From: Octopus sinensis | Lineage: Eukaryota | Reading direction: 5' to 3' | Assembly: GCF_006345805.1 (NCBI RefSeq) | Contig: NC_042999.1 | Span: 44,392,001-44,456,000, forward strand | Length of the DNA: 64,000 nucleotides | Shown here: positions 25,144 through 64,000 of the stretch, one piece after another | How the letters are laid out: each line of letters begins with the position of its first letter | Numbering within the stretch: position 1 is the first letter of the stretch | Translations under genes and position numbers: made by a program | Notes under the pieces: generated by a model | What the model saw: the letters and a program-made list of their open reading frames with translations, nothing else | The model's database searches: none | What the model was told of the DNA's origin: nothing

Positions 25144-28100
25144 CGTATATAGATATTCATTCATCATATATATATGTATATACATATATTTAATTATGTA
25201 TATGTGTGTGCGTGTATATATATATCTCATCATCATCAACGTTTAACGTCCATTTTCCATGCTAGCATGGGTTGGACGGTTCGACCAAGGTCTGGGAAGC
25301 CAGGAAGCTGCACCAGGCACCAGTCTAATCCGGCAGTGTTTCTACAGCTGGATGCTCTTCTTAACGCCAACCACTCCATGAGTGTAGTGGGTGCTTTTCT
25401 CGTGCCACCGACACAGGGGCCAGAGGAAGCTGGCAACATCCACGACTGGTTGGTGCTTTTTAAGTGCCACCGGCACGGACGCCAGTCAAGGCGGCGCTGG
25501 CATCGGTCACGTTCAGATGGTGCTTTTTACGTGTCACCAGCACAGGTATCACAACTATAATTTCCATTTGGTTTTTACTTTGATGTTGATGTACTTGACT
25601 CAATAGATCTCCTCAAGCATAGCAGGTCGCCCTACAATCCATGGTAAGCACAGCAGGCCATGAAATCACTCCATTTGTTGGGTCTTCACAGTCACAGCAT
25701 ATCTCCAGAGGTCTTGGTCTTTCGTCATTGCCTCTGTGAGGCCCAACGTTCGAAGGTCATGCTTGACCACCTCATCCTATGTCTTCCTGGGTCTACCGCT
25801 GCCCCGGATTCCTTCAACTGTTTGGGAGTGGCACTTCTTCACACATCTCTCCTCATCCATCCGTAGTACATGACCATACCAATGCAAATGTCTCTCCTGC
25901 ATGCCACATCCATCCCCACTACTGACTTGGTTATCTAAGTAGTGGAAGATGTCAACTACATCTAGTTTCTCCCCTTGGAGTGTGATGGAATCTGTTTTCT
26001 GAGTATCTGTGGTGTCTATTGCCACTGTGCATCTGCTGCACCCCTGATGGGGTGTGTGATGTGTTTTCCTTCCTACTTACTAGAACTTTGGTCTTTGCAA
26101 AATTGATTCTAAGGCCCTTCGATTTTAAACCTTGCTTCCACACTTGAAATTTCTTCTCTAGTTCTGGTAGTGATTCTGCTATGAGGGCCAAGTCATTAGC
26201 ATAGAGGAGCTCCCAGGGGCAACCGGTCTTGAACTCCTATGTTATTGCCGGGAGGACTATGATGAATAAGAAGGAGCTGAAGGCTGATCCTTGGTGGACC
26301 CCTACTTCTACCTGGAATTCTTCACTATAATTATTGCCAACCCAAACTTTACTAATGGCATCTCTGTATAGGGCCTGTACAGCCCTTATGAACCATTTGT
26401 CAATCCCCAGTTTCCACATCACCCACCAGATGAGGGATCAGGGGAGCCAGTCAAAGGCTTTCTCTAAATCCACAAAAGCCAAATATAAGCGTTTATCTTT
26501 AACTAGGTATTTCTCTTGCAGTTGCCATACCAGGAATATAGCATCAGAGGTGCTTCTACCTGGCACAAAACTCGACTGCATCTCATCTAAGCAGACTCTC
26601 TCCCTAATTAGTTGGGCTATGACCCTCTCCATGACCTTCATCCCCTGATCCAGCAGTTTGTTACCCCTGTAGTTATTTCTATCTAAACCTTTGTAGCAGT
26701 TGACTATGGGGATGCTACACCAGTCATTGGGTATGACTCCACCATGAACTAACTGGTTTACAATACAAGTGGCTAGGCCATAGCCCACACCACCAGATGT
26801 TTTAAGCATCTCAGAAGTGATTCCAGATGAGCCAGAGGCTTTTTCTGGCTTCATACCCTTAATTGCTTTATCTACCAGGCTGCTGTCTATTCGGATAGCT
26901 GGTCCCTCCACTGGATCAACATTTGGCAGGCTCTCCTGCTCCCATTCATACTCCATGTTCAGCAGTCTTTCATAATAGCTTCTCCAAGCCTCTTTCTTTT
27001 CCAAATCATTAAAAGCAAGTGCATCATCATCATGCGCACACATTTCTTTCCTGTGACATCACAATTTTCTCTCACACACTGTCTTGCAATCCGAAATACT
27101 TCAGTTCTTTGGTCCTCACGTCACTGAACATTGGCAAACTTCTTTTCTGCTTCGCCCTTGGCTATGTATACCTGTCGCCCAGCCTCTCTTTTGGCTATCT
27201 GGTATGGTTCCCTGCTACCCCCACCCTTCCAGGCCTGTTTCTTTGCCCTGATGGCTTTGTCTACCATATTATTCCACCACCATGTTACTCTAGGACTGGA
27301 AGGGACTTTGCACCATCCGTAGACTTGGTCTGTAGCATTCAGTAAGCTATCCCTTAGGAATTCCCAGCTACCTTCTATGTCCAAGGACTGTAGCTCCTCC
27401 TCTCCCTCATCAAATTTCTTGATGAGGATGTCCCTAAATCTCTGACCATGTGAAGGGTTCTTTAGCTTCTAAATCCTTCTCTTCTGGGTTGGTCTGCTTC
27501 TTGGCATCCTTCTGGTTTCAAGTCAAAAGTCACTAATGACTAGTTTATGCTGGAGGGTGCATTCCTTGCCTGAGAGGGTCTTTGTATTTATATATGTATA
27601 TTATATATGTGTGTGTGTGTATGTACACATATACCGTAAATCCTCGAGTATAGTCCACCCTTGAGTATAATACGCAGGGGATTTTTAGGGGGCTGTACTT
27701 CTGAAAAACCTAAACCTTGTGTATAATACACATCCCTTCTCTAACTTGAGTTGTGTGTAATCAAGCCAGCAGCACCTAGTCGAACAAACACTTCCGCACA
27801 TGCGTATGGGAATGTAAGTATGTTTGCAAATTGTTTTTGTTACATGTTATTCTGTGTTCTGAATACTTTTCTTGTAATAAATGTTGCTTACTGCAAGTTA
27901 TGGATGATCCTTTTATGACTTCATTGCTTTCAGGCTTAGCTTAAGGTATTTTCGCGCCTGACATCACAAATGCATCTGAATAAACATTGCTGGACAGCAA
28001 ATAGAGACTCGGACACTGCTTAGGAAATATTTTTCATTTTTAATCTCGTATATAGTACGCACTAGGGATTTTGATCTTTAAATTTTGGGGAAAAAATGCG

Positions 28101-39593: not shown

Positions 39594-40975
39594 CCAAGTT
39601 TTGATTGCTGGGTTAGTGCCCAATTTTCCATTTCCCTTTGCTAAAATTGAACCTAATATTGTGAACTAATAAAATTCTCAATAATTTTAGTGCTCCCACT
39701 GCTTACAACAGCAGAATATACCATTCAGTGCAACCATTCATTGCAAAAGCTTTCACAGATAAGTTGAGAATAAGTATGTCTCAATATAATTAAATAATTT
39801 GCACACATCTTAGACTGCAAATGACCTGTTATGTCATAACCAACAATGAGTTTTGCTTCCTCATTTTCAAAAAGCAGCATCTTAGACCAGACTTTTGGGA
39901 TTTTCAAAAAAGACATGGTTTGATGCCTTTTCCTAATCATTTCTTCTAAATTGCATACTAGCTCACCATCTATTCTTTCAACTACAAATTGTCATATCCA
40001 AGAGATTCTACTCCAATAATTCTCTTCAGAGAGACTCACCACTAGTTGCTGTAGGCTTTCTGCACTGGAATATGCCATTCACCTTCCAGTAACTGTGTCC
40101 TTGTGCATGAGTCATAATTATTTTGACTCATGCATATCATAAACTTAAGGTCTATGTAGTTGACCAACTATTTTTATCCACACGTCAAAAAATTACTCTA
40201 CAATTCTAGATGACAATGTGATCTTTTCCAAATTCATAATAATGACACATCTTGAGAAAGTTTCAGCACTTGTCACACAGAACTGTCTCAGCAACTATGC
40301 GAGGTTTTCATACCTTTCTTATTCAGGTGGCCAGTCTATACAAGCATGTGCACAAGATGGAATTCCAGTCTTGACTAACAAGCAAGAGGTTCTGAAGAAT
40401 GTTTCCAGGTACCTGAAGAAATCTGATTTGTCTGCCTCAGTCAGAGAACAAACAGTTACTAATATAAAGGCACAACCTTCATGGACATTCAAGACCAAGA
40501 CCACTGATTTATCTGGATAATGTAAGATGAGCCTCACCTTGATATCCAGACCATCTCAAAACAACACTGCCTCCCTGTTCAATCCAAGATGACCAAAAGA
40601 CGAGTACATCTACTTGTCCTTGACAAGAAGCATATGTGTGCATCCCAGGAATTCTGGTCTAATATTTATATCTGATGACTTGAGGTTTTAAAGCAAGTAA
40701 TATTGTTTCAAAGCTAACCCTAAGTTATTGTTATTGCATAAATTTGTTGAGCAAAGAACAATGATTTGGTTGATCCCGCATTTGGGTCAACTGTGCATGC
40801 AGGTTTTCAGGGTTCCCCAAAAGGTCATATCAGATGTATACAAGTGCTTTCTGTTGATAACCCCACATCATGTGGAATTATTAACAGCAAGTATTTGTAC
40901 ACTTTTAGAATGCCACTTAGAAAACAAGTTGGTCCATGCTCCCCACTCCCATTATTTTATTTCTGCATTGTTTTA

Positions 40976-42168
40976 CGAGCAAGGCACCCAAAAGTAACAG
41001 GAAACACTTTCTGTGGGACAAGCACATTGTAGTTCAGGCTTCTGCTACTAGAAGCCACTTGATGTGACCTTCAGGCATCAGTCTGCCAACCAGCGTCGTT
41101 GAGTACAGTCATACTGCCATGTAGTGTGTCTGTTTTACAGTACTTCTCTCCTGTTCGATTTTTGCGATGGCTGAAATGAAGGAACAGTGTGCTTCCATCG
41201 AATTCTGTTTTCTGCTGGGGAAAACAGCAGCCGAAACTGTTGTCATGCTTCAAACAGCTTACATGAGCAAAACAAGTTTACAAGTGGTTTTCACACTTTA
41301 GGAATGGTCACTTGTTGCTTTAAAACCAACCTCATTCAGGGCAACCGTCGACCTACCAAACGAATGAAAACATCACCGAGCAATTGACGAACTTTCCTAT
41401 GTAACTGGTGTATCCTGGAGCTCCAGCCAACGAATTTTGAAAGAGGAATTAAGAATGAAAAGAGTTGCAGTAAAATTTGTGCCTCGCTTGCTCACAGAAG
41501 ATCAAAAGCAGTCACAACTGAATGAGTGTCATGAACTGAAAGAACAGCTGGAAGTTGTTCCAGATCTTTTTTCCAAGGTCATTACTGGTGACAAAAGTTG
41601 GTGCTACAGCTATGACCTGGAAACGTCAAGCAAAATGAAACATTCAATGTCACCACACCCCAAAAAGGTGCATCAAGTGAAATCCAATATCAACACAATG
41701 CTGATTTGGTTCATTGATGTGAAAGGAATTGTCCACATAGAATTTGCTCCTCCTGGTCAAACTGTTAATCAGACATCTTAGTTGGCAGTTCTGAAGTGTT
41801 TGCAAGATGAAAATGTCCCGACCTGTGACAAAGTGGTGATTTCATCAGGACAATGCATCTGCATACACCACCTTGAGTGTGAGAGTTTTTCCTTATTCAC
41901 TTGATCTTGCTCCCAGAGACTTTTTTTTCCCTTTCCCTAAATATAAAAGTCCTGAAAGGAAAATGTTTTGCAGATGTGGAAGAGGAGAAGGAAAAAAAAA
42001 ACCTGTCAGAGGTTTTGAAAGGTACCACTTCGCAAGAGTTCCAGGAGTGCTTCGAACAGTGGAAAATGCATTGCTTCAAATAGAAGTTACTTTGAAGATG
42101 GTAAAAGTGTAAACATGTAAACCTAAATGAATAAAATAGTATTGCAAAATTCCGGTTTCTTTTGGGTG
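40976..42168 (+). mobile_element. mariner-like (DD34D-type) transposon fossil
   Basis: TA|cgagcaaggcacccaaaagtaacaggaa on the left and ttccggtttcttttgggtg on the right (TIR remnants). MAEMKEQCASIEFCFLLGKTAAETV, KFVPRLLT, ITGDKSWCY, QDNA, PYSLDLAPRDF. Confidence 0.88.
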
Positions 42169-42760
42169 GGTGGCTGGCTGGCTGGTCTAGGCATTCTTTG
42201 AAAGTCTACCAACCTTTCTACTTAAGTGCATGTGTTGGTCTTATTTGGGGAAGGACATTCCTCTCCAGTGTCTTTGTAGTGGTTTGGATGTTTCACACTA
42301 TGATAAAATAAGGTAGAGTACGTCAAATTTATTAAAAATCAGGCTGAAATTTTAAGACGCCTTCCTTGTGTAGCTTCTATATTGGTATTTATATGGAGTT
42401 TTAGGCAGAACCACAGCTGATAAAATTGCTTCTTAACTGGCTTAGTTCCATTGCCTGGCCTTGTGAGGGAATTTAGTAAATGGAAACAGAAAAAAGCCAG
42501 TTGTGTGTGTGTGTGTGCACGTATTTATATGCATATGTGCAGGCGAGTGTGTGTGTATGCGTGCAGGTGAGTGTGTGTGTCTCCTTGCCTAAACATTAAG
42601 TCAGAGATTATCAATGTGGAGAGAACCACTCCCACCTCTCCCTGCCAGGGGTTGCTGGGCATGTCGAAAGGAGCGTTAGGCTTTAGGCGGTGGTGAGGTA
42701 ACATACCGTGACTAAATCTTACCTATAGTAATTATATTATACATGATAAAACTAGTAATG

Positions 42761-43063
42761 TACATTTATTTACATTTGATGGATATTTGTCCTCATCTTG
42801 TTTGTTAACACAATGGTTTGGCTGATGTACTCTCCAGCCTTCTTCAGGTATCTTGGGGGAAATTTTGAACCTGGGTTCTCATTCATAAAGTATTTTTCGA
42901 TGTTATTAACATTATTCAGGTCACTGCCTGGAATCGAACTCAGAATCTTGGAGTTAGTAGGCTACACTCTTAACCACTACGCCATATGCCCATGGGCATA
43001 TGGTATAGTGGTTAAGAGTGCAGGCTGTTAACCCCAAGATTCCGAATTCGATTCCAAGCAGTG

Positions 43064-43096
<33 letters not shown>

Positions 43097-43283
43097 GTAG
43101 TAACATCAAAAAATACCTTAGGAATGAGAACCCAGGTTCAAAATTTCCCCATGACACCTGATGAAGGGTGGAGGGTGTATCAGCTAAAACGTGTTAACAA
43201 CAAACAAGATGAGGACAAATATCCGTCAAATGTAAATGATGTAAATAATGTACATAATTCCTCATCTCTTAAATATAGAACTG
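42761..43283. mobile_element. Head-to-head inverted dimer of a tRNA-headed SINE with a Penelope-like, hammerhead-remnant tail
   Basis: Axis at gcccat/atgggc (42992/42993); arms are reverse complements; direct repeat taaaactagtaatg at 42747-42760 and 43284-43297. Confidence 0.85.
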
Positions 43284-43664
43284 TAAAACTAGTAATGGTT
43301 ATTAAAATAAACTGAGATCTCATCAGGCACAGGGAATTCATTAACTGGCAATGCATCAAGTAAATTAACAATTTTTGTCTTTATCAATTTTTATCATTCC
43401 ATTGTTAAAAGCTTATACAAACCATTTTTTCAGAATAAAATCTTCAAATTATCATCCATATTTAGTTAGTTTGATATCTCACTCACCACTTAAGTGGGCG
43501 CTAGATATAACAAAAGCTTAAAAAATGGGGTGGGGTGCACAACAAAACAAAAAAATAGGTTATGAACCATTGCATTACACAATAATCATGAGTGCTACTA
43601 TCATTCAAGCTTCATCCCTCGTTTCCAGTATTCCATGAAATGTGTTCAACCATTGCGGGAAATA

Positions 43665-45174
43665 CAGGGGGGGGGGGGCAGAGAGGACAGATGTTTTTGA
43701 AATAGCTATTACTCATTCCCAGAGTAAGGGACATATGTCCGACAGGTATTATTCAGTCCGTGGTGCCTTAGCATTTTTTTTCTTTTCAGGTGAAGCCATG
43801 GCACTGTGGACAATAGAACATCGTGTGTTTGCCTATGACAGTTATATGAAGAATAACAAGTCTGACACAGCAGTTCAGCAAGAGTTTCGGTGCCACTTCA
43901 ACAATCACCAAAATCAGGTGGTTCCCACCTGTAAGACAATCTTACGCTGGGTGAATGCACTTCGTATATGAGGTACACTAATGAACAGGAGACCAGAGGG
44001 GGCACCATGAATGATATAGACCCCAGATAATGTAGATTGCATCAAACAAGCTTTGATATGGAGTCCGAATTGCTCTGATCGGAAGCATTCTACTGAACTT
44101 GGCATTGGTAATCGATCAGTAAGGCGTATTTTGCATGGAGACCTGCATTTCCACCTGTACAAATTGATCATTGGGCAACAGTTGAGATCATGGGACTATG
44201 CACAGCAGCTTAACTTTGCACCTCGGATGGAAGCAATTTTTTAGGCAAATGATAACATTTTGTTAATGAGTGATGAAGCTAATTTTCATCTCAATGGCAT
44301 GGTGAATCAACAGAACTGTAGTTATTGGGTTCTTGAAAATCCAAGAGAATTGCACGGAAGACCACTGCACAGCCCAAAAGTGATGGTCTGGTGTGCTGTT
44401 GGAAAAGCTGTCGTCATTGGTCCTTACTTTTCTGAAGACAATAATGCAAATGCTGTTTACTGTGAGCATTACATCAAGATGATAAACAACTTTGTGCTTG
44501 AATTATGATGAAATCGTATGCCTGTTTGACGTGTGTTGTTTCAGCAGGATGGGGTGACAGCCCACACAGCCAGAGCATCAATGGATGTTCTTCGCCCTCT
44601 CTTTAGTGATCACTTCATTTCCAGGTTTGCTGACATTCCTTGGCCTCCTTGGTTCCCTGATTTGTCCAGGTGTGATTATTTCTTGTGAGGAAACCTCAAG
44701 GCATGTGTGTATATGCATAAGCACTGTACATTGAACGATTTGAAAGAAGCTATTCACATGGAAGTCACCCAAATTGACAGAGCAATACTGGAGAGAGTGA
44801 AGGCTAACTTCCAAGAACATCTTCAGAAATGCATCATTGAAAACGGTCACCACATGATGGATGTTGTCTTCCACACTTGATTTTGATAAATGCTAATCTA
44901 ATATGAACACATTGATGTCAATAAAATTTGTTTGCACCCAAAATTAATGATTTTGTGAATTTTTCAAAAACGCCTACACTTACTACACTCACGGAGTGGT
45001 TGGCGTTAGGAAGGGCATCCAGCTGTAGAAACACTGCCAGATCAGACTGGAGCCTGGTGCAGCCTCCTGGCTTCCCAGAACCCGGTTGAACCATCCAACC
45101 CATGCTAGCAAGGAAAATGGACGTTAAACAATGGTGATGATGATGATGAAGTCTGTCCTCTCTGCTCCACCCTG
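43665..45174 (+). mobile_element. DD41D (rosa/Visitor-type) Tc1/mariner transposon fossil; transposase 43798-44880
   Basis: TA-flanked TIRs cagg...gcagagaggacag; MALWTIEHRVF, MSDEANFHLNG, FQQDG...PDLSRCDYFL with 41 residues between the last two Asp. The right TIR is split by an RTE-3' insertion at about 44975-45149. Confidence 0.9.
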
Positions 45175-47899
45175 TAGCATCTCGCTTAGAAACAAGTAAG
45201 GGTTGGCAACAGAAAAGGCATCCAGCCATAGAAAAAGTCTCAATGAACTCCAACTCCATCTGATCAATGCAAGCATGGTAAAGTGGACATAAAATTTTCC
45301 AAGTGCTATGATTGCTATATTAATGTAGGAAGTGTTTAAAAAAATACACAATAGAAATAAAGGAAGTTTAATAATAAATTGATATAATCCTTAAATTACA
45401 CAGAGAATTAAAATTGAAGAGGTAATATAAATATATAAACAGATACGTCATTAATACACAACAATTAATAAAACTTATGAAGATTTTTATTTGAAATCAG
45501 TATGGCTAATGTAAATCAAGAACATCACAACACAAGAATCTTGAAAAGTTCGCACAAAAATGAGATTTAAAAATGAAAAATTAAAAATATTCACATTCAT
45601 TATTGTAAAGATTACGACAGTCAAAAATAGTTTTAAATGACCATGTTATGATAAAATCTTTGTTTTTGTTAAAACATTGCGATTTGTTAATGGATGAGGT
45701 AAAAGACTATTTGTAAGGACAAAAAAAAAAAAAAGATGTTAATTTCTAACACAAATTCACAGAATATATTATGACTGCTAGTTCAGTATGTCTTTTATCT
45801 TCAAAACCGAGATAACTAGAACATAAAACATCAGTGCCACGAAAATAACAAAACTATCACTTCAATCCAATCACACTAAACGATGGAAGATGATGATGAG
45901 TGTGGAAGTACAAGAATCGTCTGCCATCTGAAATAAAAGCAAACCAAAACTTTAAAATGCTTTAGAAAAAAAAAATGTTATAAATATAATTTATATCAGT
46001 AGTTCCCAAAAACCCCTTAATCTTTTAGCATTCACTATACTCTATCAAATGTGATGCTTATTTATTCACCTTTTCAATTAACCCTTTAGAATTCAGGTTA
46101 CTGTGAAATGATATGCTTATTGTGCCCCGCAATTTGTTTTGAATTAATCATGCATTATCTCGTAGTTTTAAGGTTTTGATGATGTGATTGTTTATTTTTA
46201 GAATGACATTTTAAGGTAAGTGTAAGAGGCCAGATCTAGTAGGTTTGGATATAGAATAGGTAGACTATTTCTGTCAGATATTTATTATTATTTATGTGCC
46301 CATTTCAAGCCTAGCCAGGCTCATGGGCCCGGTTTCCATAGTGTATGTGTTCCCCCCAGCTGGATGGGATGCCAGTCCATCACAGCGTTACTCAAGAAAC
46401 AGGAAGAAAGAGTGAGAGAAAGTTGGGGTGAAAGATTACAACAGGGGTCACCCCACCCCTGCCGGAGCCACGTGGAACTTTAGGTGTTTTCGCTCAATAA
46501 ACACACACAACGCCCGGCCTGGGAATCGAAACCACAATCCTCCGACCACGAGTCTGCTGCCCTAACCACTGGGCCATTGGGCCCCCACTGCACCCTTTTA
46601 AAGTCTAGCCAGGCTCATGGGCCCAGTTTCCCGGTTTCAATGATGTATATGTTCCCTAGCTGGATGGGACGCCAGTCCATCACATCATTACTAATTTTTG
46701 CCAGCTGAGTGAACTGGAGCAACGTGAAATGAAGTGGTTTGCTCAAGAACACAACGCGTTGCCCAGTTCAGGAATCGAAATCACAATCTTACGATCATGA
46801 TGCTGACACCCTAACCCCTGAGCCACGCGCCTCCACATTTTCTGTCAGATATGGCAAGTTTAAATGCTAAAGGGCTAATCAAACATTGCCTTAGTAACAT
46901 CAAGATTTAGATGATGTGACTTTATTTTTTGAATGGCATAAGATAGGTGCGAGAGGCTGGATCTGGCTAGTTTTAACATAAAACAGGTAGAATTTTTGGG
47001 CTAGATGTAGCTATTTTAAATGTTAAAGGGTGAGATTAAAATGAAATTTTCTCACAGACCCCAGTATCTTGAAAGATCTTACTAAAGCTGATTTCATTTA
47101 CTGACAATATACACATTCTCCCAGTTTCATCTGTCAAAAGATATCATCATCATCATCGTTTAACGTCCGTTCTCCATGCTAGCATGGGTTGGACGGTTCG
47201 ACCGGGGATCTGGGAAGCCAGAAGGCTGCACCAGGCTCCAGTCTTATCTGGCAATGTTTCTACAGCTGGATGCCCTTCCTAACGCCAACCACTCCGTGAG
47301 TGTAGTGGGTGCTTTTTACGTGCCAATAATCATATGCTAAGGAATTAAACATTTTACACAGCAGCCTTTTCAAATTTTGAACACAGATCATAGACCCCTG
47401 TACTACATTTGAGAATCCTTAGAAATCTACAAAGTCCAAGTTAGGAAATGCTGCTTTATTATAATTATTATAATGACAGGTGAAAAATTTGATTAGCTCA
47501 TATGTCTGCTGCCCACTAGCATACTTAATAACAAGGTAATTTTATACATTTATGTTTATTTAGCTGAATGAAATAGCACATCAGGAAAATGATACAGACA
47601 AGCGTTTTATATTGGTGAAAAAAAAAATTCATCTCTACTCTGTAATCCCCAACTAAACACTATGATTCTTGGAGATGTCCACACTTCATTAAAAGGTGAC
47701 AAATTCAGCTTCATGATTCTAGGATTAAAAAATTCTTTGCACAAGATGAAAAGGTATCATAACAGTCAAATAATATTGGTCTAGTTATGTTCAAAATTAC
47801 AATATGCATATGGATTTTTGTTTTGTCACTTTTTCATCTTGTAGTTATTATTCTAGCAATATTTTTAACATTACACATACACTAAAAGTAGCTGTTTTT

Positions 47900-48140
47900 T
47901 TTTCTTCTACTTGCTACACTGGAAGGATCAGTGTCTATGGCTTTTGTAAGCCTCTTAAAACTAGAGATAACAATGTTAATGTTCCTCTTGAATCTTTGTA
48001 CAATAACACCTGCAGGAAAGATACAAGGAAGGAGGGAATTCCTGAGGGACAACATTCTGAGAAGGATTAATGTGGAATCTGGGGATGGGGAAGGAGGGTT
48101 AAGCATCAAAGAATTTTTCAAAGTCTTTTCTAATCATTAA
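47900..48140 (-). mobile_element. Old LINE 3'-end fragment (CR1/Jockey-like); similar piece at about 4620-4860 +
   Basis: LLPCIFPAG...QRFKRNIN resembles the LINE ORF2 C-terminal WNxLP..FP...FK..IN motif; heavily degraded. Confidence 0.35.
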
Positions 48141-48349
48141 ATCAGAAATGATATGAAAGCAAAATTTCAATAAACTAATGCACTATAAAACAACATTACA
48201 GCTGAATACAAAAGAGTAAGAATGGTTACAGCACTAATAATTAATACAAACAAAATACATTTTTTTTTTCTTTTTCTGTTTCAAAATTAAAATAAATATG
48301 AAATAAAATAAACATCAACTTACAATGAGAAGTATGAATTTTCGGCAGG

Positions 48350-48670
48350 TTATTTTACGAGGAATTTCCCAAGTAAGAAACTAATTGCAACAATTATTAA
48401 GCCAACTATGCAAACAACAATGGGCCAGGTCTTTTCAGGGTGATTTCCAATACATGTCACTGTCTCAGAAGCAATGCTTTCTTCCTTTTTCTCAACAGGT
48501 TCCACAGAATCAACTGAATCAACAGCTTTCTCTTCCTGTTCCTCATCATTTACATTGGTTTTCTCTTCTTCCTCTATTTCAGCAGCCTTTGCTGCTGCTC
48601 TCATTTTGATCCTTCGAGTTAATACTGTGGTTACACTTTCTGATATCGGTGTGTATACTTCTGTTTTTTC
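48350..48670 (-). CDS. Terminal exon: acidic segment + C-terminal TM helix (WPIVVCIVGLIIVAISFLLG-KFLVK*)
   Basis: Acceptor tttattttcag; open to TAA; 20-residue hydrophobic stretch encoded at 48368-48427, followed by only 5 residues. Confidence 0.85.
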   Translation of the reverse strand, partial: EKTEVYTPISESVTTVLTRRIKMRAAAKAAEIEEEEKTNVNDEEQEEKAVDSVDSVEPVEKKEESIASETVTCIGNHPEKTWPIVVCIVGLIIVAISFLLGKFLVK

Positions 48671-51402
48671 CTGAAAATAAAGATTTTAAAAAATACATTT
48701 TAAAAATGATTTATTTTCTGTATGATGCAACTTCCTTAACCCTTTCGTTACCAACACGGCTGAAACCGGCTCTGGCTCTGTGTACGAATGTCTTGTTTCC
48801 ATAAGTTTTAAATTAAAATCTTCCACCAAACCTTTGTCACAATTTATGTTCCTAACACTAGCTGAATGATAACTAAGTTATTTTACTAAATTCTTTGTTA
48901 TGTTTAAAATTAATTGAAAGAAACACAGAGCATCTCAAAATAAATACAGTAACGAAAGGGTTAAACGGCTGTTTGAAAACATATCCAAAACAATTAAAAC
49001 AAACAAGTAATGAAACTTTAGTTTATAGATTGCCTCAGTCTAAAACTGGAATGAGCAGGAGCCAAAGGGGAGCCTCTACTTAATTGATCTGCTAGAAATC
49101 TTCCTCAAATTGTATTACCATTTTAAATAAAAGATACTGACAAATGTAATCTCTAATATACAAGAAGATAGGATGGAACACTTGCTTGATAAGGGTTTTT
49201 CTGGGACTAAACTAGGATATGCCACCTCTTTAGAATTGCTCAATAATCAAATATATAATATTGAGCAATTCTAAAGAGGTGGCATATCCTAGTTTAGTCC
49301 CAGAACAACTCTTATCAAGCAAGTGTTCCATCCTTGATTTAAACCTTTCATTACTGTATTTATATTGAGAGGCTCTATGTTTCTTTTAATTACTTTAAAT
49401 ATAATGGGCATGGCTGTGTGGTTAGGGAGCTTGCTTCCTAACTACATGGTTTCGGGTTCAGTCCCACTGCGTGGCAGTTTGAGCAGGTGTCTTCTACTAT
49501 AGCTCCGAGCTGACCGGAGCTTTGTGATTGAATTCGGTAGGCAGAAGTTACTGCCGTGTGTGTATGTGTGCGTATGAGGCTCAGTGCCTCTCCGAAAGAG
49601 AGAGAGAGAGAGGGATAACCAAGAATTTAGTAAAATAACTTAGTTATCATTAATCTAATGTTAGGAACATAAATTGTGACTAAAGTTTGCTGTAAGATTT
49701 TAATTCAAAACTTATGGAAACAAGACATTTGTACTCAGAGTCAGAGCCGGCTTCAGCTGGGTTGGTAACAAAAGGGTTAATGATTATGAGTAAACTACTT
49801 CATCATATGCCTCTTATAATAAGAGTTTATCACATCAGAACAAAGAAATTTGCCATGACTTACTGTAGTTATCCTGGTTGATGTAAAGGAAGTAACAGGA
49901 GTCTGTTCAACGCCTTCATTAGAAAGCTCTGTGACAACTGATGGGCTGTCAACGACCTCTTCCAGTTGAGTTGTACTGTCTTCTGTAATTTCTTTTGTAA
50001 CATCTTCACTTGGTGGTACGGTTTCCAAATCTTCAGCTGGAGTTACAGTTTTTTCTTCAGGTGGAGCTATTATTGGTGTGCTTTCTCGAGACGGTTTCTC
50101 TGGGGTGCCTATGTCTTTCTTTACAGGAAGCTTTGTTCGGGTGCGAGATCGAGAACGGGAACGTGATTTTGAGCGACGTCTCTGATAGCAAAACGAAAAA
50201 TTAAACATTTTAAATTTACCTTAAAATTCAAATATTTTAGCACTTTAAAAGAACTTGGATGAGTCAGAATTTAATCCTTTTGTGATATTTCAAATGAAAA
50301 ACACAACTATGTGTTTCAAAGATAAAAAATTTACAGGGTTCAGTAGCAGAATAACTTTCTCATTAAACTATGTTTGGAACTAGTAAATATAAATTTTTCA
50401 TTTAAATTTACGAGGGTAGATTTTTATTCAAATATGAACCTTTTAAAAATGGACAGTTTGTATAATCAAATTTGGTACCAAAAGGATTAAACAACATATA
50501 GGCTTGGATATAATTTCACTATAATAAAATGAATCAAAACAGCTGTCAAAGATGTTGTCATATTTTATAATTAATAAATAACACTTTATTAATTACCTCT
50601 CCATTTTCTCCTTATTCTTTATGATAAATACAAATATCAGTGGCAACTCCGCCACTCGGGCTGTTCAGGCTTAGCCTGAGTATAAATTTAGTGAAGTGAA
50701 TGTGTATTTGCAAGCTGATTTAATTTCTCTCAACACTGACTTCAAGTATGTAATTGCAGCCAATAACTCAGGCCCCTTTGATTGAGCCTGGCCACAGTTC
50801 ATTTATTTTTGTTCAGCATCTGGCGATCGTTTTAGAGGTGCCCTGTGTCAAAAACATCATTCGTAGCAGACACTCTTTCAACATCATTCACATGTACCTG
50901 ACTCAAAAGTTACAGCCTGAGTTGTTATCTATAATCGTAAAACTTAAAAGTAATTCAAATTCAATGTTTTCTTGAAACAACATATTTCTATAGAGATTAG
51001 GGTTTAAATTCCAATCTATGAAAAGTTTCCATTCTTAAAGGAACTAAAACTTATCCAGCAGCTGCAGGTAATACGAACAAGCCTAGTAGGTGTAAAAGAC
51101 TAACTGGTATCTCTTGTCAAGAGTACAGGCGATAGTCAGATCGCTGATGTTTGTTGTGTACCCTGCTGATTTTATTTGATTGGTGTTATTCTGTGCATTT
51201 GTGTATAAAGATCAGTTGTATTTTGCAGGGTTGCTTTATTTTTACCATTAACTTAGAAATGGAGAAAGACAATGCTTGATATAAAAAATAAGCCACTTGG
51301 GGCTAGAAATAAAGCAGAAAAACATGAAATTCTACAAGCAGGTATGTGTTTTATGAGAAATCTGTGATAAGCCTGAGTGACACTGATCACCTGGAATTGC
51401 TT

Positions 51403-51452
<50 letters not shown>

Positions 51453-52178
51453 TACATATATATAAAGGTGTCTTTTCACAATTAACATCCAAAAGGCACA
51501 AATATAGTTGTGACTAAGGGTGCTAATCAGTATCAGTGTTGCTAGAAGCAAGAGTCAAAACAAATCTTAGCCATGGGTAAGCACTTATCTAATGACTGAC
51601 AAGGGAGACAAGCTCTCAACAGCAAGCGAGACAGAGCCAGATCCATGATGATTTCGGATTTTAGTCCTCATCAGTGACCTTTAACTGGTTGCCGAGGGTT
51701 AAAACTTAACATATTCATATTTTGAGTTCTATTTTATCCCCGTTTGCATCAACATACATACATTACATATAAATAGGGGGAGAGAATGTGTGCATATTTG
51801 TGCTTCCTTGTCTTAACATTGCGTGATTGTTATAAATGAATGTCATTCATTTCCAAAATGCCGTGGAACAAGTTTAGTCAAAGAGAAATATTACTTTGCT
51901 TGGAAACAGATAAAGGTTGGCAACAGGAAGGGTATCAAGCTATAGAAAATCTGGCTCAAACCCTGTCTGATTCATGCAAGCATAGAAAAGTGGACGTTAT
52001 GATGATGATGAACACTTACTCTAGTAGATTTATTTCTCTTGTACTCTTCCAGAAGTGGTGTTGCACTTGTAAGATTTGATGCTGGTTCCCATGAGTCTTC
52101 TTCTGCACCAAAATTTTTCCATCGAATAAGGTATTCTATTTGCCCTCTTTTCTTCCTGTCTTTGAGCACAGCTCCAAT
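48350..52178 (-). CDS. Chromodomain + RS-rich + acidic linker + single C-terminal transmembrane protein (3' three coding exons: 52178-52020, 50181-49864, 48670-48350; N-terminal exon not found)
   Basis: Three GT-AG, all phase-0 exons (159, 318, 321 bp) join into a 265-aa open frame ending in TAA at 48350-48352. Confidence 0.85.
48740..48960 (+). mobile_element. piggyBac-like TTAA MITE
   Basis: TTAA|ccctttcgttac...gtaacgaaaggg|TTAA. Confidence 0.88.
49170..49334. repeat. Foldback: 76-bp inverted arms (2 mismatches), 13-nt loop
   Basis: 49170-49245 versus reverse complement of 49259-49334. Confidence 0.92.
49619..49776 (-). mobile_element. Partial inverted copy of the same TTAA MITE
   Basis: Reverse complement of about 48740-48897; ends gtaacaaaaggg|TTAA. 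Confidence 0.8.
49864..50181 (-). CDS. RS-rich and S/T-P/acidic exon (RRRSKSRSRSRSRTRTKLPVKKDIGTPEKPSRESTP...TRITT)
   Basis: Acceptor ttttcgttttgctatcag, donor GTAAGT; open 106 codons within ORF 49795-50208. Confidence 0.85.
51635..51679 (-). ncRNA. Minimal type I hammerhead ribozyme motif
   Basis: GGUCA-CUGAUGA-GGA(CUAAAA)UCC-GAAA-UC(AUCAUG)GA-UC-UGGCU: both conserved core boxes, three stems and an AUC cleavage triplet. Confidence 0.55.
52020..52178 (-). CDS. Chromodomain exon (IGAVLKDRKKRGQIEYLIRWKNFGAEEDSWEPASNLTSATPLLEEYKRNKSTR)
   Basis: Classic chromodomain signature YLxxWKxF...D-SWEP; acceptor tttatttctgtaattgaag, donor GTAAGT. Confidence 0.92.
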
Positions 52179-52242
52179 CTTCAATTACAGAAATAAAAAC
52201 AAATTTTTTTTACAAACACAATTTATTTTAAAATGTTTAAAG

Positions 52243-52443
52243 CAGTAGTTCTCAAGCATGGTCCAGTTAAGATTTTGTTAAAATTTATCTTTTATAAATT
52301 TGTTATACTAAATAATTTGTTATATTCACAAAATATTTTAATACAATTCCAAATAATTAATTATAAAAATATGTTTATCTAAGTCCATCTAAGTAAAATA
52401 TGAATCAAAGGGTTCACAGCCATGAAATGGTTGAGAAACACTG
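52243..52443. mobile_element. hAT-like MITE (related copy 32993-33235)
   Basis: cagtagttctcaa...ttgagaaacactg TIRs; 8-bp flanks gtttaaag / ctttaaag (7/8 identical). Confidence 0.7.
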
Positions 52444-55400
52444 CTTTAAAGATAAGATTACTAGAAAGGATTTTTTCCTTTTTTAATTGTAAAAAAGTTA
52501 ATTGTAACTCATTAACTAGAATGCCAGAAAGAATGTGAGCTGAATCTCTGGCTGCATGTATTCTTTCTCTTCACCCACCAATGTTTTGCCAGCATTAGGT
52601 TTGAGAAGCAGCAATGACTATTGAGAAGTAGACAAGTCAACAAAAGAGCCTCTAATGCTTACTGGACTGCTAAAAAGAGCAGTCAAATATTTCTTTAAAA
52701 AATCTATCTTAAAAACGAGGAAAGATTGGACGATCATGACTGGAATATTGTGATCATAGATCAGCTGGATCAGAGACGACCTGAGGTTAAACAGAAACAC
52801 TAGCAAGATAGGAATTAATGATCTTCAAACAAAATCAAAAGTAAAAAGGAGCTATCATTGACCACTATTTACTACCTGTATTTCCACATTACAGAGGAGT
52901 CCAGAGCCAAATGCATGACACTAGTTTTCCAACAAAGATGATATATCATTGTTTATATTTTCTTAAAGCTAGCCTAGAGTCTTGTATTGTTAACTTCTGA
53001 CATGGACTTTCTCTACAAAACACTGATGTTCTAAACTTAAAGGATTTACCAACAAAACCATTTCAACCATAAGCTGTTAATTTTTCAGTCAAGATGTACA
53101 GGCCCAATAGTTAATTAGGTGAAATTGTATTCAGATATTTGGTAAAAGAGAAAATATATTGGTTGATGACCAATACTTTTTTTAACTGGTGAGGACTTAA
53201 GTAGTTTTTACTTTATTTATTATTTTTGTTTTTGCTTGTCTGCATTTCCAAGAGCAATTCCACAGCCTTACATTATCATCCCAAATTAAATGAGCAGCTA
53301 CACTCACACACACAAATGCCTATTAACCAAGATATTGTATATATGTTCGTGGAGGTGCAATGGCTCAGTGGTTACGGCAGCGGACTCATGGTCTTATGAC
53401 CGCGGTTTCGATTCCCAGACCGGGCATTGTGAATGTTTATTGAGTGAAAACACCTAAAGCTCTACGAGGCTCCGGCAGCAGGTGGTGGTGAACTCTGCTG
53501 TACTCTTTCACCATGTCTGTGGAGTGCTCAGCCACTTGCACGCTCATTTCATGAGTAGGTTGTTTCGTTGATCGGATCAGCTGAAACCCTCGTCGTCGTA
53601 ACCGATGGAGTGCCAACCACATTGTATATGTTTATATACCCGTCAGCATTCACCCAGAATGAGTTGAGATGGCTCCACCTAGTGATTTCAAAGCATTGTG
53701 AACAGAAGACCACCATGCTTAACAAAGATGTTTGATGCAGAAGTTGTTAACAAGCCTTTAGGTTGGATAGCAGTGGTACTGGACATCTAAGATGAAACTC
53801 CCATTGGCTTAAAAAGCTGGCTATACCATATGGCATAACCAAATAGATACCTTCTACTGAAGTAATACTCCCCCATGCAACATAACACTGGCACCACTAA
53901 ATAAGGATGAGTATGAAAGCAAGAGTTTGGCATTACATCCATTCAAATTGCTTGCCTTAAGACCAGCATGTGCTGCACTGCAACCCAGTGTGTACATGAA
54001 GCATTGATCTCTGCAGTTGCATATATTGATGGTAAGGCTCCATCTTCAAAATCTAGAGTATGCCTATCTCAATATTAGGGGCGATTCTTTGCTATAACCA
54101 CTGTGACTGCTAATGTTCACTGGCTGGACGTGATAGTATTGATGATACTATTACTGAGTGTGTATGCTTGTGTGTAGAGACTACATGTGAAACATTGAAT
54201 ATGTACGATATTCTGTTATTACTATACTCTTTTACTCTTTCTCTTTTATTTGTTTCAGTCACTTGACTGTGGCCATGCTGGAGCACCACCTTTAGTCGAG
54301 CAAATTCTATCAGTCTCTTTTGCCGAACCGCTAAGTTATGGGGACACAAACACACCAGCATCGGTTGTCAAGCAATGTTGGGGGTGACAAACACACACAC
54401 ACATATATGTATGTATGTACAACAGGCTTCTTTCAGTTTCCGTCTATCAAATCCACTCACAAGGCTTTGGTTGGCCCGAGGCTATAGTAGACAACACTTG
54501 CTCAAGGTGCCACACAGTGGGACTGAACCCAAAACCATGTGGTTGGTAAGCAAGTTACTTACCACACAGCCACTCCTATGCCTATACTCTAAATAATATT
54601 TATTAAGTGTTGTTACTATTGTAATTGCAACTTGAAACAATCCATTTTACACTTACATACATAAAATAAGAAAATTTCATCAAACAACATCTATTTGTAA
54701 TAGTACAATATTTTCTGGTATGACTCAGTGAATAACTTCAATAATTTATACAAGCTTCACACCCAACAAGATTCTTTATTCAATAATATTTTGTGGAAAT
54801 GCTTAAAACTAAGCATTCCTTGTATAATCTACTACTTATCTGTTGACATACCCGTTTCACACAAGTGGTAGAAGATAACTTTCAAGTAAATGAGAAAAGC
54901 ATGTCATCAAATTTAAATATTAATCTGCTTACTTAACCGTTTTGCATTCAGATTACTCTGTCAAATGTAATATTTATTCATAAAGTTCTGAATAACTCCT
55001 GCATTATCTCATAGCTTCAAGATTTTAATGACGAGAGTGTTTCTTTTTAGAATGACACTGTATAGTAGGTGTGAGAGACTAGATAGGTCTGGCCAGTTTG
55101 AACTTAAAACAGGTAGACTATTTAGGCCAGATACGGCCAGTTTAAATGCTAAAGGGCTAAGCTCACAAATTGAACCAATAATAATTCCCTATACTCACTA
55201 CATGAATAATATCAATGAGGTAGTATAACTTTTAGCCAATTAAGATTTGCTATTTTTCTACTACATTCATATCAACTGTTTACAAGTATTAAGCAGTATC
55301 TCTTACAACCAGCTGTCAACATTGCAACAGTTTTTGTTTCTCTAGACTTTTTTGCAGTCCTTATTTGCAATCCTTCTATTAACAAATTCAGCAGGCATGA

Positions 55401-63800: not shown

Positions 63801-64000
63801 TATTAAATGTAGCTACTCTACAGCAAGAAATGTTTTTTTTCTGGCCCTTTTATCTCATACTTCACCTCTGTCTATTCGTTATTTAGCATAAAGTTTCCCA
63901 CTTTGGGGTTTCTAGTTATGCAAACTGCATGGCGACCTCATCAATGCTAGTGGCATGAAAAGGAAAAGGCATCCAGTACATGCTATAATGTGGTTTGCAT

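What the first reader, a model, noticed from the sequence alone, without database searches (positions are those of the whole stretch)
48350..52178. Chromodomain-RS-tail-anchor protein: candidate nuclear-envelope heterochromatin tether
Seen in sequence: three phase-0 exons encode a chromodomain with two of the three methyl-lysine cage positions visible (W and F in IRWKNF, plus DSWEP; the first aromatic would be in the missing upstream exon). Immediately after come a basic RS tract (RRRSKSRSRSRSRTRTK), several S/T-P sites including a full CDK consensus (TPEK), a long acidic linker, and one 20-residue hydrophobic helix 5 residues from the stop. Established: chromodomain readers (HP1, Polycomb, CDY) are normally soluble. 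Vertebrate lamin B receptor combines a Royal-family Tudor domain, an SRPK/CDK1-regulated RS region and membrane anchoring, and C. elegans CEC-4 anchors H3K9me chromatin at the periphery through a chromodomain. Inference: this is a single-pass, tail-anchored inner-nuclear-membrane protein that could read H3K9me/H3K27me directly and be released by mitotic phosphorylation. I do not recognise it as a named family.
Basis: partly seen in the sequence, partly recalled or inferred. Interest (0 to 1): 0.85.

Follow-up and report, generated by a model that had tools for sequence, protein, structure and literature searches.

The report
Membrane-anchored chromodomain protein gene in octopus
These three exons belong to a real, conserved Octopus sinensis gene for a methyl-histone-reader domain joined to a membrane anchor, an uncharacterised design that could pin silent chromatin directly to the nuclear envelope.

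Summary
Minus-strand exons 52178-52020, 50181-49864 and 48670-48350 splice in phase 0 into 265 aa. With a 9-codon first exon lying outside the window, this equals RefSeq XP_029634319.1 of Octopus sinensis.

The protein has four parts:
- a canonical chromodomain with a Y/W/F aromatic cage;
- an RS tract;
- a disordered acidic linker;
- one very hydrophobic helix 5 residues from the stop.

Synonymous changes far outnumber non-synonymous ones in all three exons. Uninterrupted transcript contigs from other cephalopods join the chromodomain to the transmembrane (TM) helix.

It is not LBR (no Tudor, no sterol reductase), HP1 (no chromoshadow) or CDYL (no crotonase domain). The same chromo-RS-TM layout occurs in gastropods. 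A chromo-TM layout with the same exon plan occurs in the acorn worm Ptychodera. Outside the chromodomain, however, sequence similarity between these groups is no better than chance.

Inner-nuclear-membrane residence, methyl-histone binding and mitotic release remain untested inferences. No paper describing such a protein was found. Alternative first exons give isoforms that lack the first cage residue.

Verdict: a real, unnamed membrane-anchored chromodomain family, best read as a new variant of the LBR/CEC-4 kind of tether. Interest is moderate to high.

The parts
52020..52178 (-). Exon 2 of the gene (first exon inside the window). It encodes the chromodomain core IGAVLK...YLIRWKNFGAEEDSWEP...KSTR, with cage residues W and F.
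   Evidence: Translation and splice sites. Pfam Chromo E=4.5e-11. 81% nucleotide identity to Argonauta; 19 synonymous versus 4 non-synonymous codon differences. AlphaFold pLDDT 96-98 for residues 10-60. Foldseek matches to MPP8, CDYL2, CBX1/5 and Chp1 chromodomains, target TM-score 0.8-0.94.
50182..52019 (-). Intron between the chromodomain exon and the RS exon (gt...ag, phase 0). It contains a TA/CA microsatellite near 51410-51470.
   Evidence: Sequence. No conservation with Argonauta.
49864..50181 (-). Exon 3. It encodes the RS tract, S/T-P sites and an acidic, disordered linker.
   Evidence: 72% nucleotide identity to Argonauta. pLDDT mostly below 60.
50131..50181 (-). RS tract RRRSKSRSRSRSRTRTK, directly after the chromodomain.
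   Evidence: An RS/SR run at this position is present in all molluscan members, with 9-26 RS/SR dipeptides per protein.
50095..50106 (-). TPEK, a full CDK-type [ST]Px[KR] consensus.
   Evidence: Conserved in O. bimaculoides and Argonauta. Decapods carry TPLK, TPLK and TPIK instead.
48671..49863 (-). Intron between the RS exon and the TM exon. It is filled by nested inverted repeats that look like a transposon insertion.
48350..48670 (-). Exon 4 (terminal coding exon). It encodes the conserved EKTEVYTPISESVTTVLTRRIKMRAAAKAAE segment, an acidic stretch, the TM helix, KFLVK and the stop codon (48350-48352).
   Evidence: The same exon with the same stop is found in Argonauta and in the RefSeq models.
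48368..48424 (-). Transmembrane segment PIVVCIVGLIIVAISFLLG, 5 residues from the C-terminus.
   Evidence: Kyte-Doolittle 19-mer mean 2.87. AlphaFold helix 240-264 with pLDDT 92-93. 10 synonymous versus 6 mostly conservative non-synonymous differences from Argonauta. Conserved in cuttlefish/decapod transcripts.
45814..45934 (-). Conserved non-repeat block 2.4 kb downstream of the stop codon. It is possibly part of the 3'UTR; its role is unknown.
   Evidence: 80% identity to Argonauta L004:43400-43532, which lies 0.5 kb downstream of the stop there. The O. vulgaris ab initio model uses it as a terminal coding exon.

Best explanation
Window 48350-52178 (minus strand) holds exons 2-4 of a four-exon Octopus sinensis gene encoding a 274-aa tail-anchored chromodomain protein.

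Shown:
- An N-terminal CDYL/HP1-type chromodomain with an intact Y8/W29/F32 aromatic cage.
- An RS tract directly after it.
- About 170 residues of acidic, S/T-P-rich disordered linker containing one conserved helix.
- A single very hydrophobic C-terminal helix followed by 5 residues.
- No signal peptide.

Inferred mechanism:
- The helix is inserted post-translationally into the ER membrane, with the whole ~28 kDa N-terminal part facing the cytosol/nucleoplasm.
- The protein diffuses through the pore membrane and is retained at the inner nuclear membrane, because its chromodomain binds methylated ARKS-type histone tails (H3K9me2/3 and/or H3K27me3) and its basic RS tract binds chromatin.
- It would thus tether heterochromatin directly to the membrane.
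- Phosphorylation of the RS tract (SRPK type) and of S/T-P sites (CDK type), together with the H3S10ph switch, would loosen the tether in mitosis.
- Alternative first exons produce anchored isoforms lacking strand beta-1 and the cage tyrosine. These would be reader-incompetent and could modulate tethering.
For: Gene model:
- Splice sites and phases.
- Identity to RefSeq XP_029634319.1 and a 100% DNA match to O. sinensis.
- Uninterrupted ORFs on 1.3-1.7 kb Logan contigs (probably transcripts) from a cuttlefish-like and another decapod cephalopod, joining chromo, RS and TM, with the stop right after the TM.

Selection:
- Synonymous changes greatly outnumber non-synonymous ones in all three exons.
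- Within window 40000-53000, the exons plus one 130-nt downstream block are the only unique conserved sequence versus Argonauta.

Chromodomain:
- Pfam E=4.5e-11.
- Best solved-structure matches are CDYL (8e-11), CBX5 and CDYL2, with the cage Y, W and F aligned.
- AlphaFold pLDDT 96-98 with three strands plus a helix.
- Foldseek hits are all methyl-lysine-reading chromodomains, rmsd 0.6-1.7 A.

Anchor:
- Kyte-Doolittle 2.87, 5 residues from the end, pLDDT 92-93.
- Among the fetched proteins outside the chromo-TM group, none has a 19-mer above Kyte-Doolittle 2.1.

Recurrence of the layout:
- Six gastropod proteins have chromo + RS + TM.
- Ptychodera has chromo + TM, with the same four-exon plan and the first intron at the same place and phase.

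Precedents:
- LBR's Tudor + RS region, SRPK1/CDK1 phosphorylation and mitotic mobility (PMC5617974).
- CEC-4 is a chromodomain H3K9me reader at the inner nuclear membrane, displaced in mitosis, independent of lamin, and found at the nuclear rim even in yeast (PMC4783997).
- That emerin and LAP2beta are tail-anchored inner-nuclear-membrane proteins retained by nucleoplasmic binding is established knowledge, not tested here.
Against: - There is no localisation, binding or phosphorylation data. Everything after 'membrane-anchored chromodomain protein' is analogy.
- A tail anchor by itself targets the ER, not specifically the nuclear envelope.
- Conserved isoforms lack the first cage residue. Ptychodera has Cys at that position and Pomacea has Leu at the third cage position. 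Methyl-lysine reading may therefore not be the universal function.
- Outside cephalopods the CDK-type sites are not positionally conserved and are sometimes absent.
- In a non-circular HMM test, the post-RS regions of cephalopods, gastropods and Ptychodera are no more alike than shuffled sequences. An exhaustive search with the C-terminal profile found only cephalopod proteins. A single ancient family is therefore not demonstrated.
- Gastropod members have 55-77 residues after the TM, so they are not tail-anchored in the strict sense.
Confidence: 0.55

Rival explanations
1. It is a tail-anchored protein of the general ER or another organelle. Its chromodomain serves as a protein-protein module for a non-histone partner (methylated or not), as in cpSRP43 or in MPP8 binding to methylated DNMT3A/ATF7IP. 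It is not a chromatin tether.
For: Tail anchors insert into ER or organelle membranes by default. Chromodomains that bind non-histone ligands appear among the matches: cpSRP43 and MPP8-DNMT3AK47me2 as the top Foldseek hit. Isoforms and some orthologue-like proteins lack a full cage.
Against: The cage is complete in the MSSEEDIYE isoform and in most members. The closest sequences and structures are H3K9me3/H3K27me3 readers. The RS tract and basic clusters are typical of nuclear proteins. The nucleoplasmic part is small enough (~28 kDa) to reach the inner membrane (established size limit of about 60 kDa, own knowledge).
Confidence: 0.2
2. The functional product is a soluble nuclear chromodomain/RS protein. 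On this view the hydrophobic end is either removed by splicing, as in the O. vulgaris model CAI9719236.1, or is not membrane-spanning.
For: The O. vulgaris annotation splices out the TM-coding stretch and continues to a conserved block at window 45814-45934.
Against: That model needs a roughly 80-nt intron inside exon 4 and a frameshifted read-through. RefSeq models of O. sinensis, O. bimaculoides and Argonauta, and the Logan (probably transcript) contigs of other cephalopods, all keep the TM and stop right after it. The TM codons are under purifying selection. The helix has Kyte-Doolittle 2.87 and pLDDT 92-93.
Confidence: 0.07
3. The chromodomain is a domesticated or decaying piece of a chromovirus-type retrotransposon integrase, and the rest is a fortuitous ORF.
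For: Integrase-linked chromodomains score about as well against the octopus chromodomain (~65 bits) as gastropod family members do (~62 bits). The window is rich in transposon remnants.
Against: - No integrase or reverse-transcriptase domains adjoin it.
- The gene has a multi-exon structure with conserved introns.
- It is conserved across octopods, decapods and beyond, with synonymous changes greatly outnumbering non-synonymous ones.
- The N-terminal placement and the best solved-structure matches are CDYL/HP1-like.
Confidence: 0.03
4. It is the N-terminal part of an ordinary lamin B receptor, whose sterol-reductase exons lie further downstream.
Against: - There is an in-frame stop 5 codons after the first and only TM in every species and transcript.
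- The reader domain is Chromo, not LBR-Tudor, and no ERG4/ERG24 hit appears in nine members.
- No conserved coding islands lie downstream except one 130-nt block.
Confidence: 0.01

Closest known systems
Lamin B receptor (LBR), N-terminal Tudor + RS region
   Same: The order of parts is the same: a Royal-family methyl-lysine reader at the N-terminus, an RS tract immediately after it, CDK-type sites beside the RS tract, then a membrane anchor. The expected logic of chromatin tethering with phosphorylation control also matches (PMC5617974).
   Different: There is one C-terminal helix instead of eight TM segments, and no sterol-reductase domain. No sequence similarity was detected.
C. elegans CEC-4
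   Same: It is a small chromodomain protein placed at the inner nuclear membrane, where the chromodomain itself reads H3K9me. Its non-chromodomain part is disordered and is responsible for envelope association (PMC4783997, PMC7111258).
   Different: The CEC-4 chromodomain is internal (constructs cover aa 25-141). The papers read mention no transmembrane helix. The octopus protein has an explicit tail anchor and an RS tract. I could not obtain the CEC-4 sequence, so homology beyond the chromodomain is untested.
CDY/CDYL/CDYL2 chromodomains
   Same: These are the best sequence matches (CDYL 8e-11; about 40% identity to CDYL2). The chromodomain sits at the extreme N-terminus with the same ...EE(L/I)YE... 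start, and the Y/W/aromatic cage aligns.
   Different: CDYL proteins carry a C-terminal crotonase/enoyl-CoA-hydratase-like domain and are soluble. Here that domain is absent, and an RS tract plus a TM helix are present instead.
HP1/CBX1,3,5
   Same: It has the same chromodomain fold and cage, an acidic N-terminal flank and a basic hinge-like region after the chromodomain. RefSeq calls the O. bimaculoides protein 'heterochromatin protein 1'.
   Different: It has no chromoshadow domain (PF01393 is not found), so it lacks HP1-type dimerisation and PxVxL binding. It is membrane-anchored.
Emerin / LAP2beta (tail-anchored inner-nuclear-membrane proteins)
   Same: The overall design matches: a small N-terminal chromatin-binding module, a long disordered linker and a single C-terminal TM with a few luminal residues. 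Size is similar at 250-450 aa (own knowledge of these proteins).
   Different: Those proteins use a LEM domain that binds BAF, an indirect DNA link. This protein would read histone methylation directly. No LEM domain was detected.

Membership tests
Chromodomain (Pfam PF00385) methyl-lysine readers | Significant match to the Chromo profile and the three-strand + helix fold | tested here: met
   Pfam E=4.5e-11, 42.9 bits against a 25.1-bit cut-off. pLDDT 96-98, strands 10-19, 22-29 and 38-41 plus a helix from residue 46. Foldseek target TM-score 0.8-0.94.
Chromodomain (Pfam PF00385) methyl-lysine readers | Three-residue aromatic cage (HP1 Y24/W45/F48 equivalents) | tested here: met
   Y8 (exon 1, outside the window), W29 and F32 align with the CDYL/CBX5 cage residues. 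This is not met in the isoform that uses the alternative first exon. Actual binding is untested.
HP1 family | C-terminal chromoshadow domain (PF01393) | tested here: not met
   No PF01393 hit at E<=1 in the window protein or in nine relatives.
CDY/CDYL family | C-terminal enoyl-CoA hydratase/crotonase-like domain (PF00378) | tested here: not met
   No PF00378 hit. A fish CDYL2 found in the same search does carry it (P0052).
Lamin B receptor | N-terminal LBR Tudor domain | tested here: not met
   The reader domain is Chromo. No member has a hit to the LBR Tudor family. One gastropod protein (P0013) just passes the cut-off of Pfam Tudor-knot (PF11717, a chromodomain-type family; 21.2 vs 20.8 bits); all other Tudor-knot hits are sub-threshold.
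Lamin B receptor | Multi-pass ERG4/ERG24 sterol C14-reductase domain | tested here: not met
   There is one TM only and a stop 5 codons later. No ERG4/ERG24 hit.
Lamin B receptor | RS tract next to the reader domain | tested here: met
   RRRSKSRSRSRSRTRTK starts one residue after the chromodomain exon.
Tail-anchored membrane proteins | A single TM helix within about 30 residues of the C-terminus, no N-terminal signal peptide, and the bulk of the protein N-terminal to the helix | tested here: met
   Kyte-Doolittle 2.87 for a 19-mer ending 5 residues from the C-terminus; the N-terminus MSSEEDIYE is hydrophilic; there is no second hydrophobic segment. This is also met in Argonauta, decapods and Ptychodera (5-9 residues after the TM) but not in gastropods (55-77 residues). 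Membrane insertion itself is not testable here.
C. elegans CEC-4-type perinuclear anchor | Sequence homology to CEC-4 outside the chromodomain; inner-nuclear-membrane localisation; H3K9me1/2/3 binding | not testable with these tools
Localisation and binding need experiments. The literature describes its C-terminal domain as disordered and required for inner-nuclear-membrane localisation.
SR splicing proteins | RRM domain(s) plus an RS domain | tested here: not met
   No RRM hit. Only the short RS tract is present.
One bilaterian 'chromo-RS-TM' family (cephalopods + gastropods + hemichordate) | Detectable homology outside the chromodomain | tested here: not met
   HMMs built from the post-RS region of cephalopods or of gastropods score the other groups no better than shuffled sequences. 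The exhaustive C-terminal profile search found cephalopods only. By chromodomain alone, Ptychodera is as close to CDYL2 as to the molluscs.
One bilaterian 'chromo-RS-TM' family (cephalopods + gastropods + hemichordate) | Shared architecture and gene structure | tested here: inconclusive
   All groups share the order of parts and the MSS-EE-(Y/F)E start. Ptychodera has four exons, with the first intron at the same residue and phase (EVCE|VQKIL versus DIYE|IGAVL). Whether this intron is also shared with CDYL/HP1 genes was not tested.

The most novel reading that the evidence does not exclude
Chromodomain proteins anchored in the membrane by a single C-terminal helix may be an old bilaterian solution for tethering methylated chromatin directly to the inner nuclear membrane. 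On this reading they are present in molluscs and hemichordates, lost or replaced in vertebrates and insects, and functionally (perhaps evolutionarily) equivalent to nematode CEC-4. Promoter choice (the first exon with or without the cage tyrosine) would switch the anchor between reading and non-reading forms.
Probability: 0.3. Interest if true: 0.8.

Novelty: new variant of a known kind. Interest (0 to 1): 0.6.

Why it matters
How heterochromatin is held at the nuclear periphery is still only partly understood. The one clear case of an envelope protein that itself reads H3K9 methylation is CEC-4 in C. elegans, which authors describe as having 'no obvious homolog' in mammals (PMC4783997). LBR reads a different mark through a Tudor domain.

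A protein that fuses an HP1/CDYL-type chromodomain to an integral membrane anchor would be the simplest conceivable methyl-histone-to-membrane tether. Its presence in cephalopods, snails and an acorn worm would show that direct tethering is not a nematode oddity.

It also offers a compact, testable module of 274 aa, and a natural on/off design through alternative first exons. If the protein instead sits in the bulk ER or binds a non-histone ligand, it would still be an unusual use of a chromodomain outside the soluble nuclear pool.

Tried and rejected
1. I searched for the first exon inside the window (patterns for MSSEEDIYE-like and SRLPV-like peptides). It is absent. It was later located outside the window through the O. 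vulgaris and O. sinensis loci.

2. A word-indexed search and an exhaustive HMM search with a C-terminal-only profile found nothing beyond cephalopods, apart from Batillaria P0005 (itself a row of the query profile), a 115-aa gastropod-type fragment at E=5 (P0008) and one low-complexity hit (P0010).

3. The apparent 59-bit link of the gastropod P0005 to that profile was circular, because P0005 was part of the profile. The non-circular test gave chance-level scores. I therefore dropped the claim of sequence homology in the linker and TM region between mollusc classes.

4. The first AlphaFold run used the exon-1-less protein and a 12-row alignment. It modelled the chromodomain as helices at low confidence and was rejected as uninformative for that domain. 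A second run with the full N-terminus and 55 rows gave a confident chromodomain.

5. The KASH idea for the gastropod luminal tails (proline-rich ends such as PPPQSA) was rejected. The tails are 55-77 aa, the PPP is not at the extreme C-terminus, there is no KASH Pfam hit, and an outer-membrane location makes no sense for a chromodomain.

6. The LBR, HP1, CDYL and SR-protein readings were rejected on missing defining domains.

7. The CEC-4 primary paper (PubMed 26607792) is not held. The CEC-4 sequence was not obtainable, so no direct comparison was made.

8. The look-up of the Pomacea protein's locus failed.

9. ARAGORN found no tRNA genes in 44-56 kb, although tRNA-like SINE sequences are visible there.

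Full report
**1. What is in the sequence**

The region is AT-rich, repeat-laden animal DNA. On the minus strand there are three open stretches with consensus splice sites:
- 52178-52020 (ttgaag| ... |gtaagt)
- 50181-49864 (ctatcag| ... |gtaagt)
- 48670-48350 (ttttcag| ... TAA)

Their lengths are 159, 318 and 321 nt, all in phase 0.

- IRWKNF and DSWEP;
- RRRSKSRSRSRSRTRTK (50181-50131);
- TPEK (50106-50095), six S/T-P sites after the chromodomain and a net charge of -23 in the linker;
- PIVVCIVGLIIVAISFLLG (48424-48368), followed by KFLVK and the stop.

**2. Source and gene model**

The window is 100% identical over 18.6 kb to Octopus sinensis chromosome CM016861.1, and 99.2% identical to O. 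vulgaris.

The 265 aa, preceded by MSSEEDIYE, is exactly RefSeq XP_029634319.1, named 'chromo domain-containing protein cec-1 isoform X2' (274 aa). O. bimaculoides has the same protein under the name 'heterochromatin protein 1 isoform X1'.

The gene spans 37.5 kb and has four coding exons. Two alternative first exons both lie beyond the window's end:
- MSSEEDIYE, about 10.7 kb past position 64000;
- MMSTPSRLPVACSRTQK, about 21.9 kb past position 64000.

**3. Is it a real, expressed, selected gene?**

- Contigs of 1.7 and 1.3 kb carry uninterrupted ORFs of 300 and 320 aa with chromodomain, RS tract, linker, TM helix and a stop right after the helix. One comes from a cuttlefish-like species whose 90% cluster contains Acanthosepion pharaonis; the other comes from another decapod. 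They must be spliced transcripts, because the octopus gene has kilobase introns at these points.
- Argonauta hians has the same exons, the same stop and both alternative first exons.
- Between Octopus and Argonauta, in the 13 kb around the gene (window 40000-53000), the only unique conserved DNA is the three exons plus one 130-nt block downstream.
- Codon comparison gives 19 synonymous against 4 non-synonymous differences in the chromodomain exon. The start of exon 4 gives 15:3. The last 33 codons, which include the TM helix, give 10:6, and the replacements there are mostly I/V and F/Y.
- The O. vulgaris ab initio model removes the TM-coding stretch through an ~80-nt 'intron' inside exon 4 and reads on out of frame. 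This model stands alone and is most likely an annotation artefact.

**4. The parts**

*Chromodomain.*
- Pfam E=4.5e-11.
- The nearest solved structures by sequence are CDYL, CBX5 and CDYL2. Y8, W29 and F32 align with their cage residues.
- With the complete N-terminus and a 55-row alignment, AlphaFold gives pLDDT 96-98 for residues 10-60, as three strands and a helix.
- All 50 listed Foldseek matches are chromodomains, nearly all solved as methyl-lysine readers or in complex with methyl-lysine peptides: MPP8, Chp1, CDY1, CDYL2, CBX1/2/5/7, Rhino and Oxpecker. Target TM-scores are 0.8-0.94 and rmsd is 0.6-1.7 A.

*RS tract.* It begins directly after the chromodomain exon and is present in every molluscan relative.

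*Linker.* It is predicted disordered, except for a helix over TVLTRRIKMRAAAKAAEIEEEE (pLDDT 84-88). This helix lies in the best-conserved non-chromodomain segment among cephalopods.

*Anchor.*
- The Kyte-Doolittle mean is 2.87 over 19 residues, against 0.21 for the next best segment.
- It is modelled as a helix with pLDDT 92-93.
- As an internal control, among the fetched proteins that are not chromo-TM members or their fragments, none has a segment above Kyte-Doolittle 2.1.

*Other domains.* None is detected in the window protein or in nine relatives. There is no chromoshadow, crotonase, LBR-type Tudor, ERG4/ERG24, LEM, KASH or RRM domain. The only extra hit above a cut-off is a borderline Tudor-knot match (a chromodomain-type Pfam family) over the chromodomain of one gastropod protein.

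**5. Relatives**

A masked full-length profile search, followed by a hydropathy filter, found the same layout in two further groups.

*Gastropods.* Batillaria, Nucella, Pomacea, two paralogues in Babylonia and one transcriptome contig have:
- the N-terminal start MSSGEEFE;
- a chromodomain and a long RS tract;
- a conserved RSRLAVRQVQNDQK...WWWFADH motif;
- a TM helix followed by a 55-77-residue luminal tail carrying LVPDxGVLRQRLGESY.

*Hemichordate.* Ptychodera flava has a chromodomain, an S/T-rich linker and a TM helix 9 residues from the end, in two isoforms.

The Ptychodera gene has four exons arranged as in octopus. Its first intron sits at the identical residue and phase.

Caution is needed on common ancestry:
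- In a non-circular test, HMMs of the post-RS region from one group score the other groups no better than shuffled sequences.
- An exhaustive search of 1.8 billion representatives with the cephalopod-weighted C-terminal profile found only cephalopod proteins.
- By chromodomain alone, Ptychodera is as near to fish CDYL2 as to the molluscs.

Common ancestry of all these chromo-TM proteins is therefore plausible from architecture, N-terminus and gene structure, but it is not demonstrated. Convergence is possible. A bivalve hit (Solemya) has no TM helix.

**6. How it most likely works**

*Shown.* The protein has a cage-complete chromodomain and an RS tract on the N-terminal side of a single C-terminal hydrophobic helix, with no signal peptide. 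That is the definition of a tail-anchored protein whose bulk faces the cytosol or nucleoplasm.

*Inferred from established knowledge of tail-anchored nuclear-envelope proteins (emerin, LAP2beta) and the diffusion-retention model.*
- The helix is inserted into the ER membrane.
- The ~28 kDa extraluminal part passes the pore membrane.
- The protein accumulates at the inner nuclear membrane, because it binds chromatin through the chromodomain (ARKS-type methyl-lysine, H3K9me2/3 and/or H3K27me3, as for its closest relatives CDYL/CDYL2/HP1) and through the basic RS tract.

*By analogy with LBR and CEC-4.* LBR's RS tract is phosphorylated by SRPK1, and a neighbouring site by CDK1, making LBR mobile at mitosis (PMC5617974). 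CEC-4 is displaced in mitosis (PMC4783997). By analogy, the RS tract and S/T-P sites could release the tether. This part is weakly supported:
- TPEK is conserved in octopods;
- decapods have three TPxK sites at other positions;
- some gastropods and Ptychodera have none.

*Isoforms.* Alternative first exons that omit strand beta-1 and the cage tyrosine are annotated or present in O. sinensis, O. bimaculoides, Argonauta, a cuttlefish-like transcript, Pomacea and a further gastropod contig. These isoforms should be anchored but unable to bind methyl-lysine in the canonical way, which points to regulation by promoter choice.

**7. Comparison with what is known**

The protein works like LBR's N-terminus or CEC-4 but is a member of neither family. 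It also fails the defining features of HP1, CDYL and SR proteins (see the membership table).

The reviews and later papers read here call CEC-4 an inner-nuclear-membrane or INM-associated protein, with a disordered C-terminal domain needed for localisation. None mentions a transmembrane helix. I could not obtain its sequence or the primary paper.

Full-text searches combining chromodomain with tail-anchored, transmembrane and inner nuclear membrane terms returned no paper describing such a protein. The database names are automatic.

**8. Verdict**

The architectural interpretation is supported, while the cell-biological function is an attractive but untested inference. The gene is already annotated, so the novelty lies in recognising a conserved membrane-anchored chromodomain design rather than in finding a gene. 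I rate it a new variant of a known kind (direct chromatin-to-envelope tethers), with interest 0.6.

Noticed in passing
outside the window: L006:3001 and L006:14177 (O. sinensis); L004:10001 and L004:31716 (Argonauta): There are two alternative first exons. One (MSSEEDIYE) supplies strand beta-1 and the cage tyrosine. The other (M(M)(S/T)TPSRLPVACSRT(Q/R)K, with a conserved SRLPV motif and a TPSR site) does not. Cage-less N-termini also occur in O. bimaculoides X2 (MVELQ), Pomacea X1 and a gastropod contig.
   Followed up: partly
window 45814-45934 (minus strand): A 121-nt non-repeat block is 80% identical to Argonauta. It lies 2.4 kb downstream of the stop in octopus and 0.5 kb downstream in Argonauta. 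It may be a conserved 3'UTR element. The O. vulgaris model translates it as a terminal exon (MADDSCTSTLIIIFHRLV).
   Followed up: partly
window 48368-48450 and O. vulgaris protein CAI9719236.1 (P0001): The O. vulgaris annotation removes the TM-coding stretch with a very short internal 'intron' and reads on out of frame (FLTWEIPRKITCRKFILLI...). This disagrees with the RefSeq models of three other species and with the transcript contigs. It is probably an annotation error.
   Followed up: partly
window 48733-49783 (intron 3): There are nested inverted repeats: 169-nt arms (90% complementary) enclosing 62-nt arms and a near-perfect 76-nt hairpin (97%, 13-nt loop). They look like nested MITE-type insertions.
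   Followed up: partly
window 47143-47296 and 44992-45150: A ~150-nt element is present in inverted copies here and hits many places in the Argonauta locus. It is a SINE-like repeat shared across octopods. Similar tRNA-like sequences are visible at about 49400-49530 and 53350-53480, but ARAGORN calls no tRNA gene.
   Followed up: partly
window 9714-11680 (minus), 26438-27043 (minus), 41437-41781 (plus): ORFs carry reverse-transcriptase motifs (YMDD-containing, 319 aa plus an adjoining 280 aa), with a second reverse-transcriptase fragment elsewhere. A further ORF resembles a mariner-type transposase fragment. These are transposon remnants, and no other host gene was recognised in the window.
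   Followed up: no
P0013, P0017, P0026, P0005, P0015, P0037 (gastropod proteins): Gastropod chromo-RS-TM proteins carry a conserved pre-TM motif (RSRLAVRQVQNDQK...W-WWFADH) and a 55-77-residue post-TM tail with LVPDxGVLRQRLGESY. Cephalopods lack both. Babylonia has two paralogues. No Pfam family covers the tail.
   Followed up: partly
L004:52696-52855 (Argonauta): The next called gene downstream in Argonauta encodes an ankyrin-repeat ion-channel protein (TRPA-like by Pfam domains). Whether the same neighbour follows in octopus was not examined.
   Followed up: no
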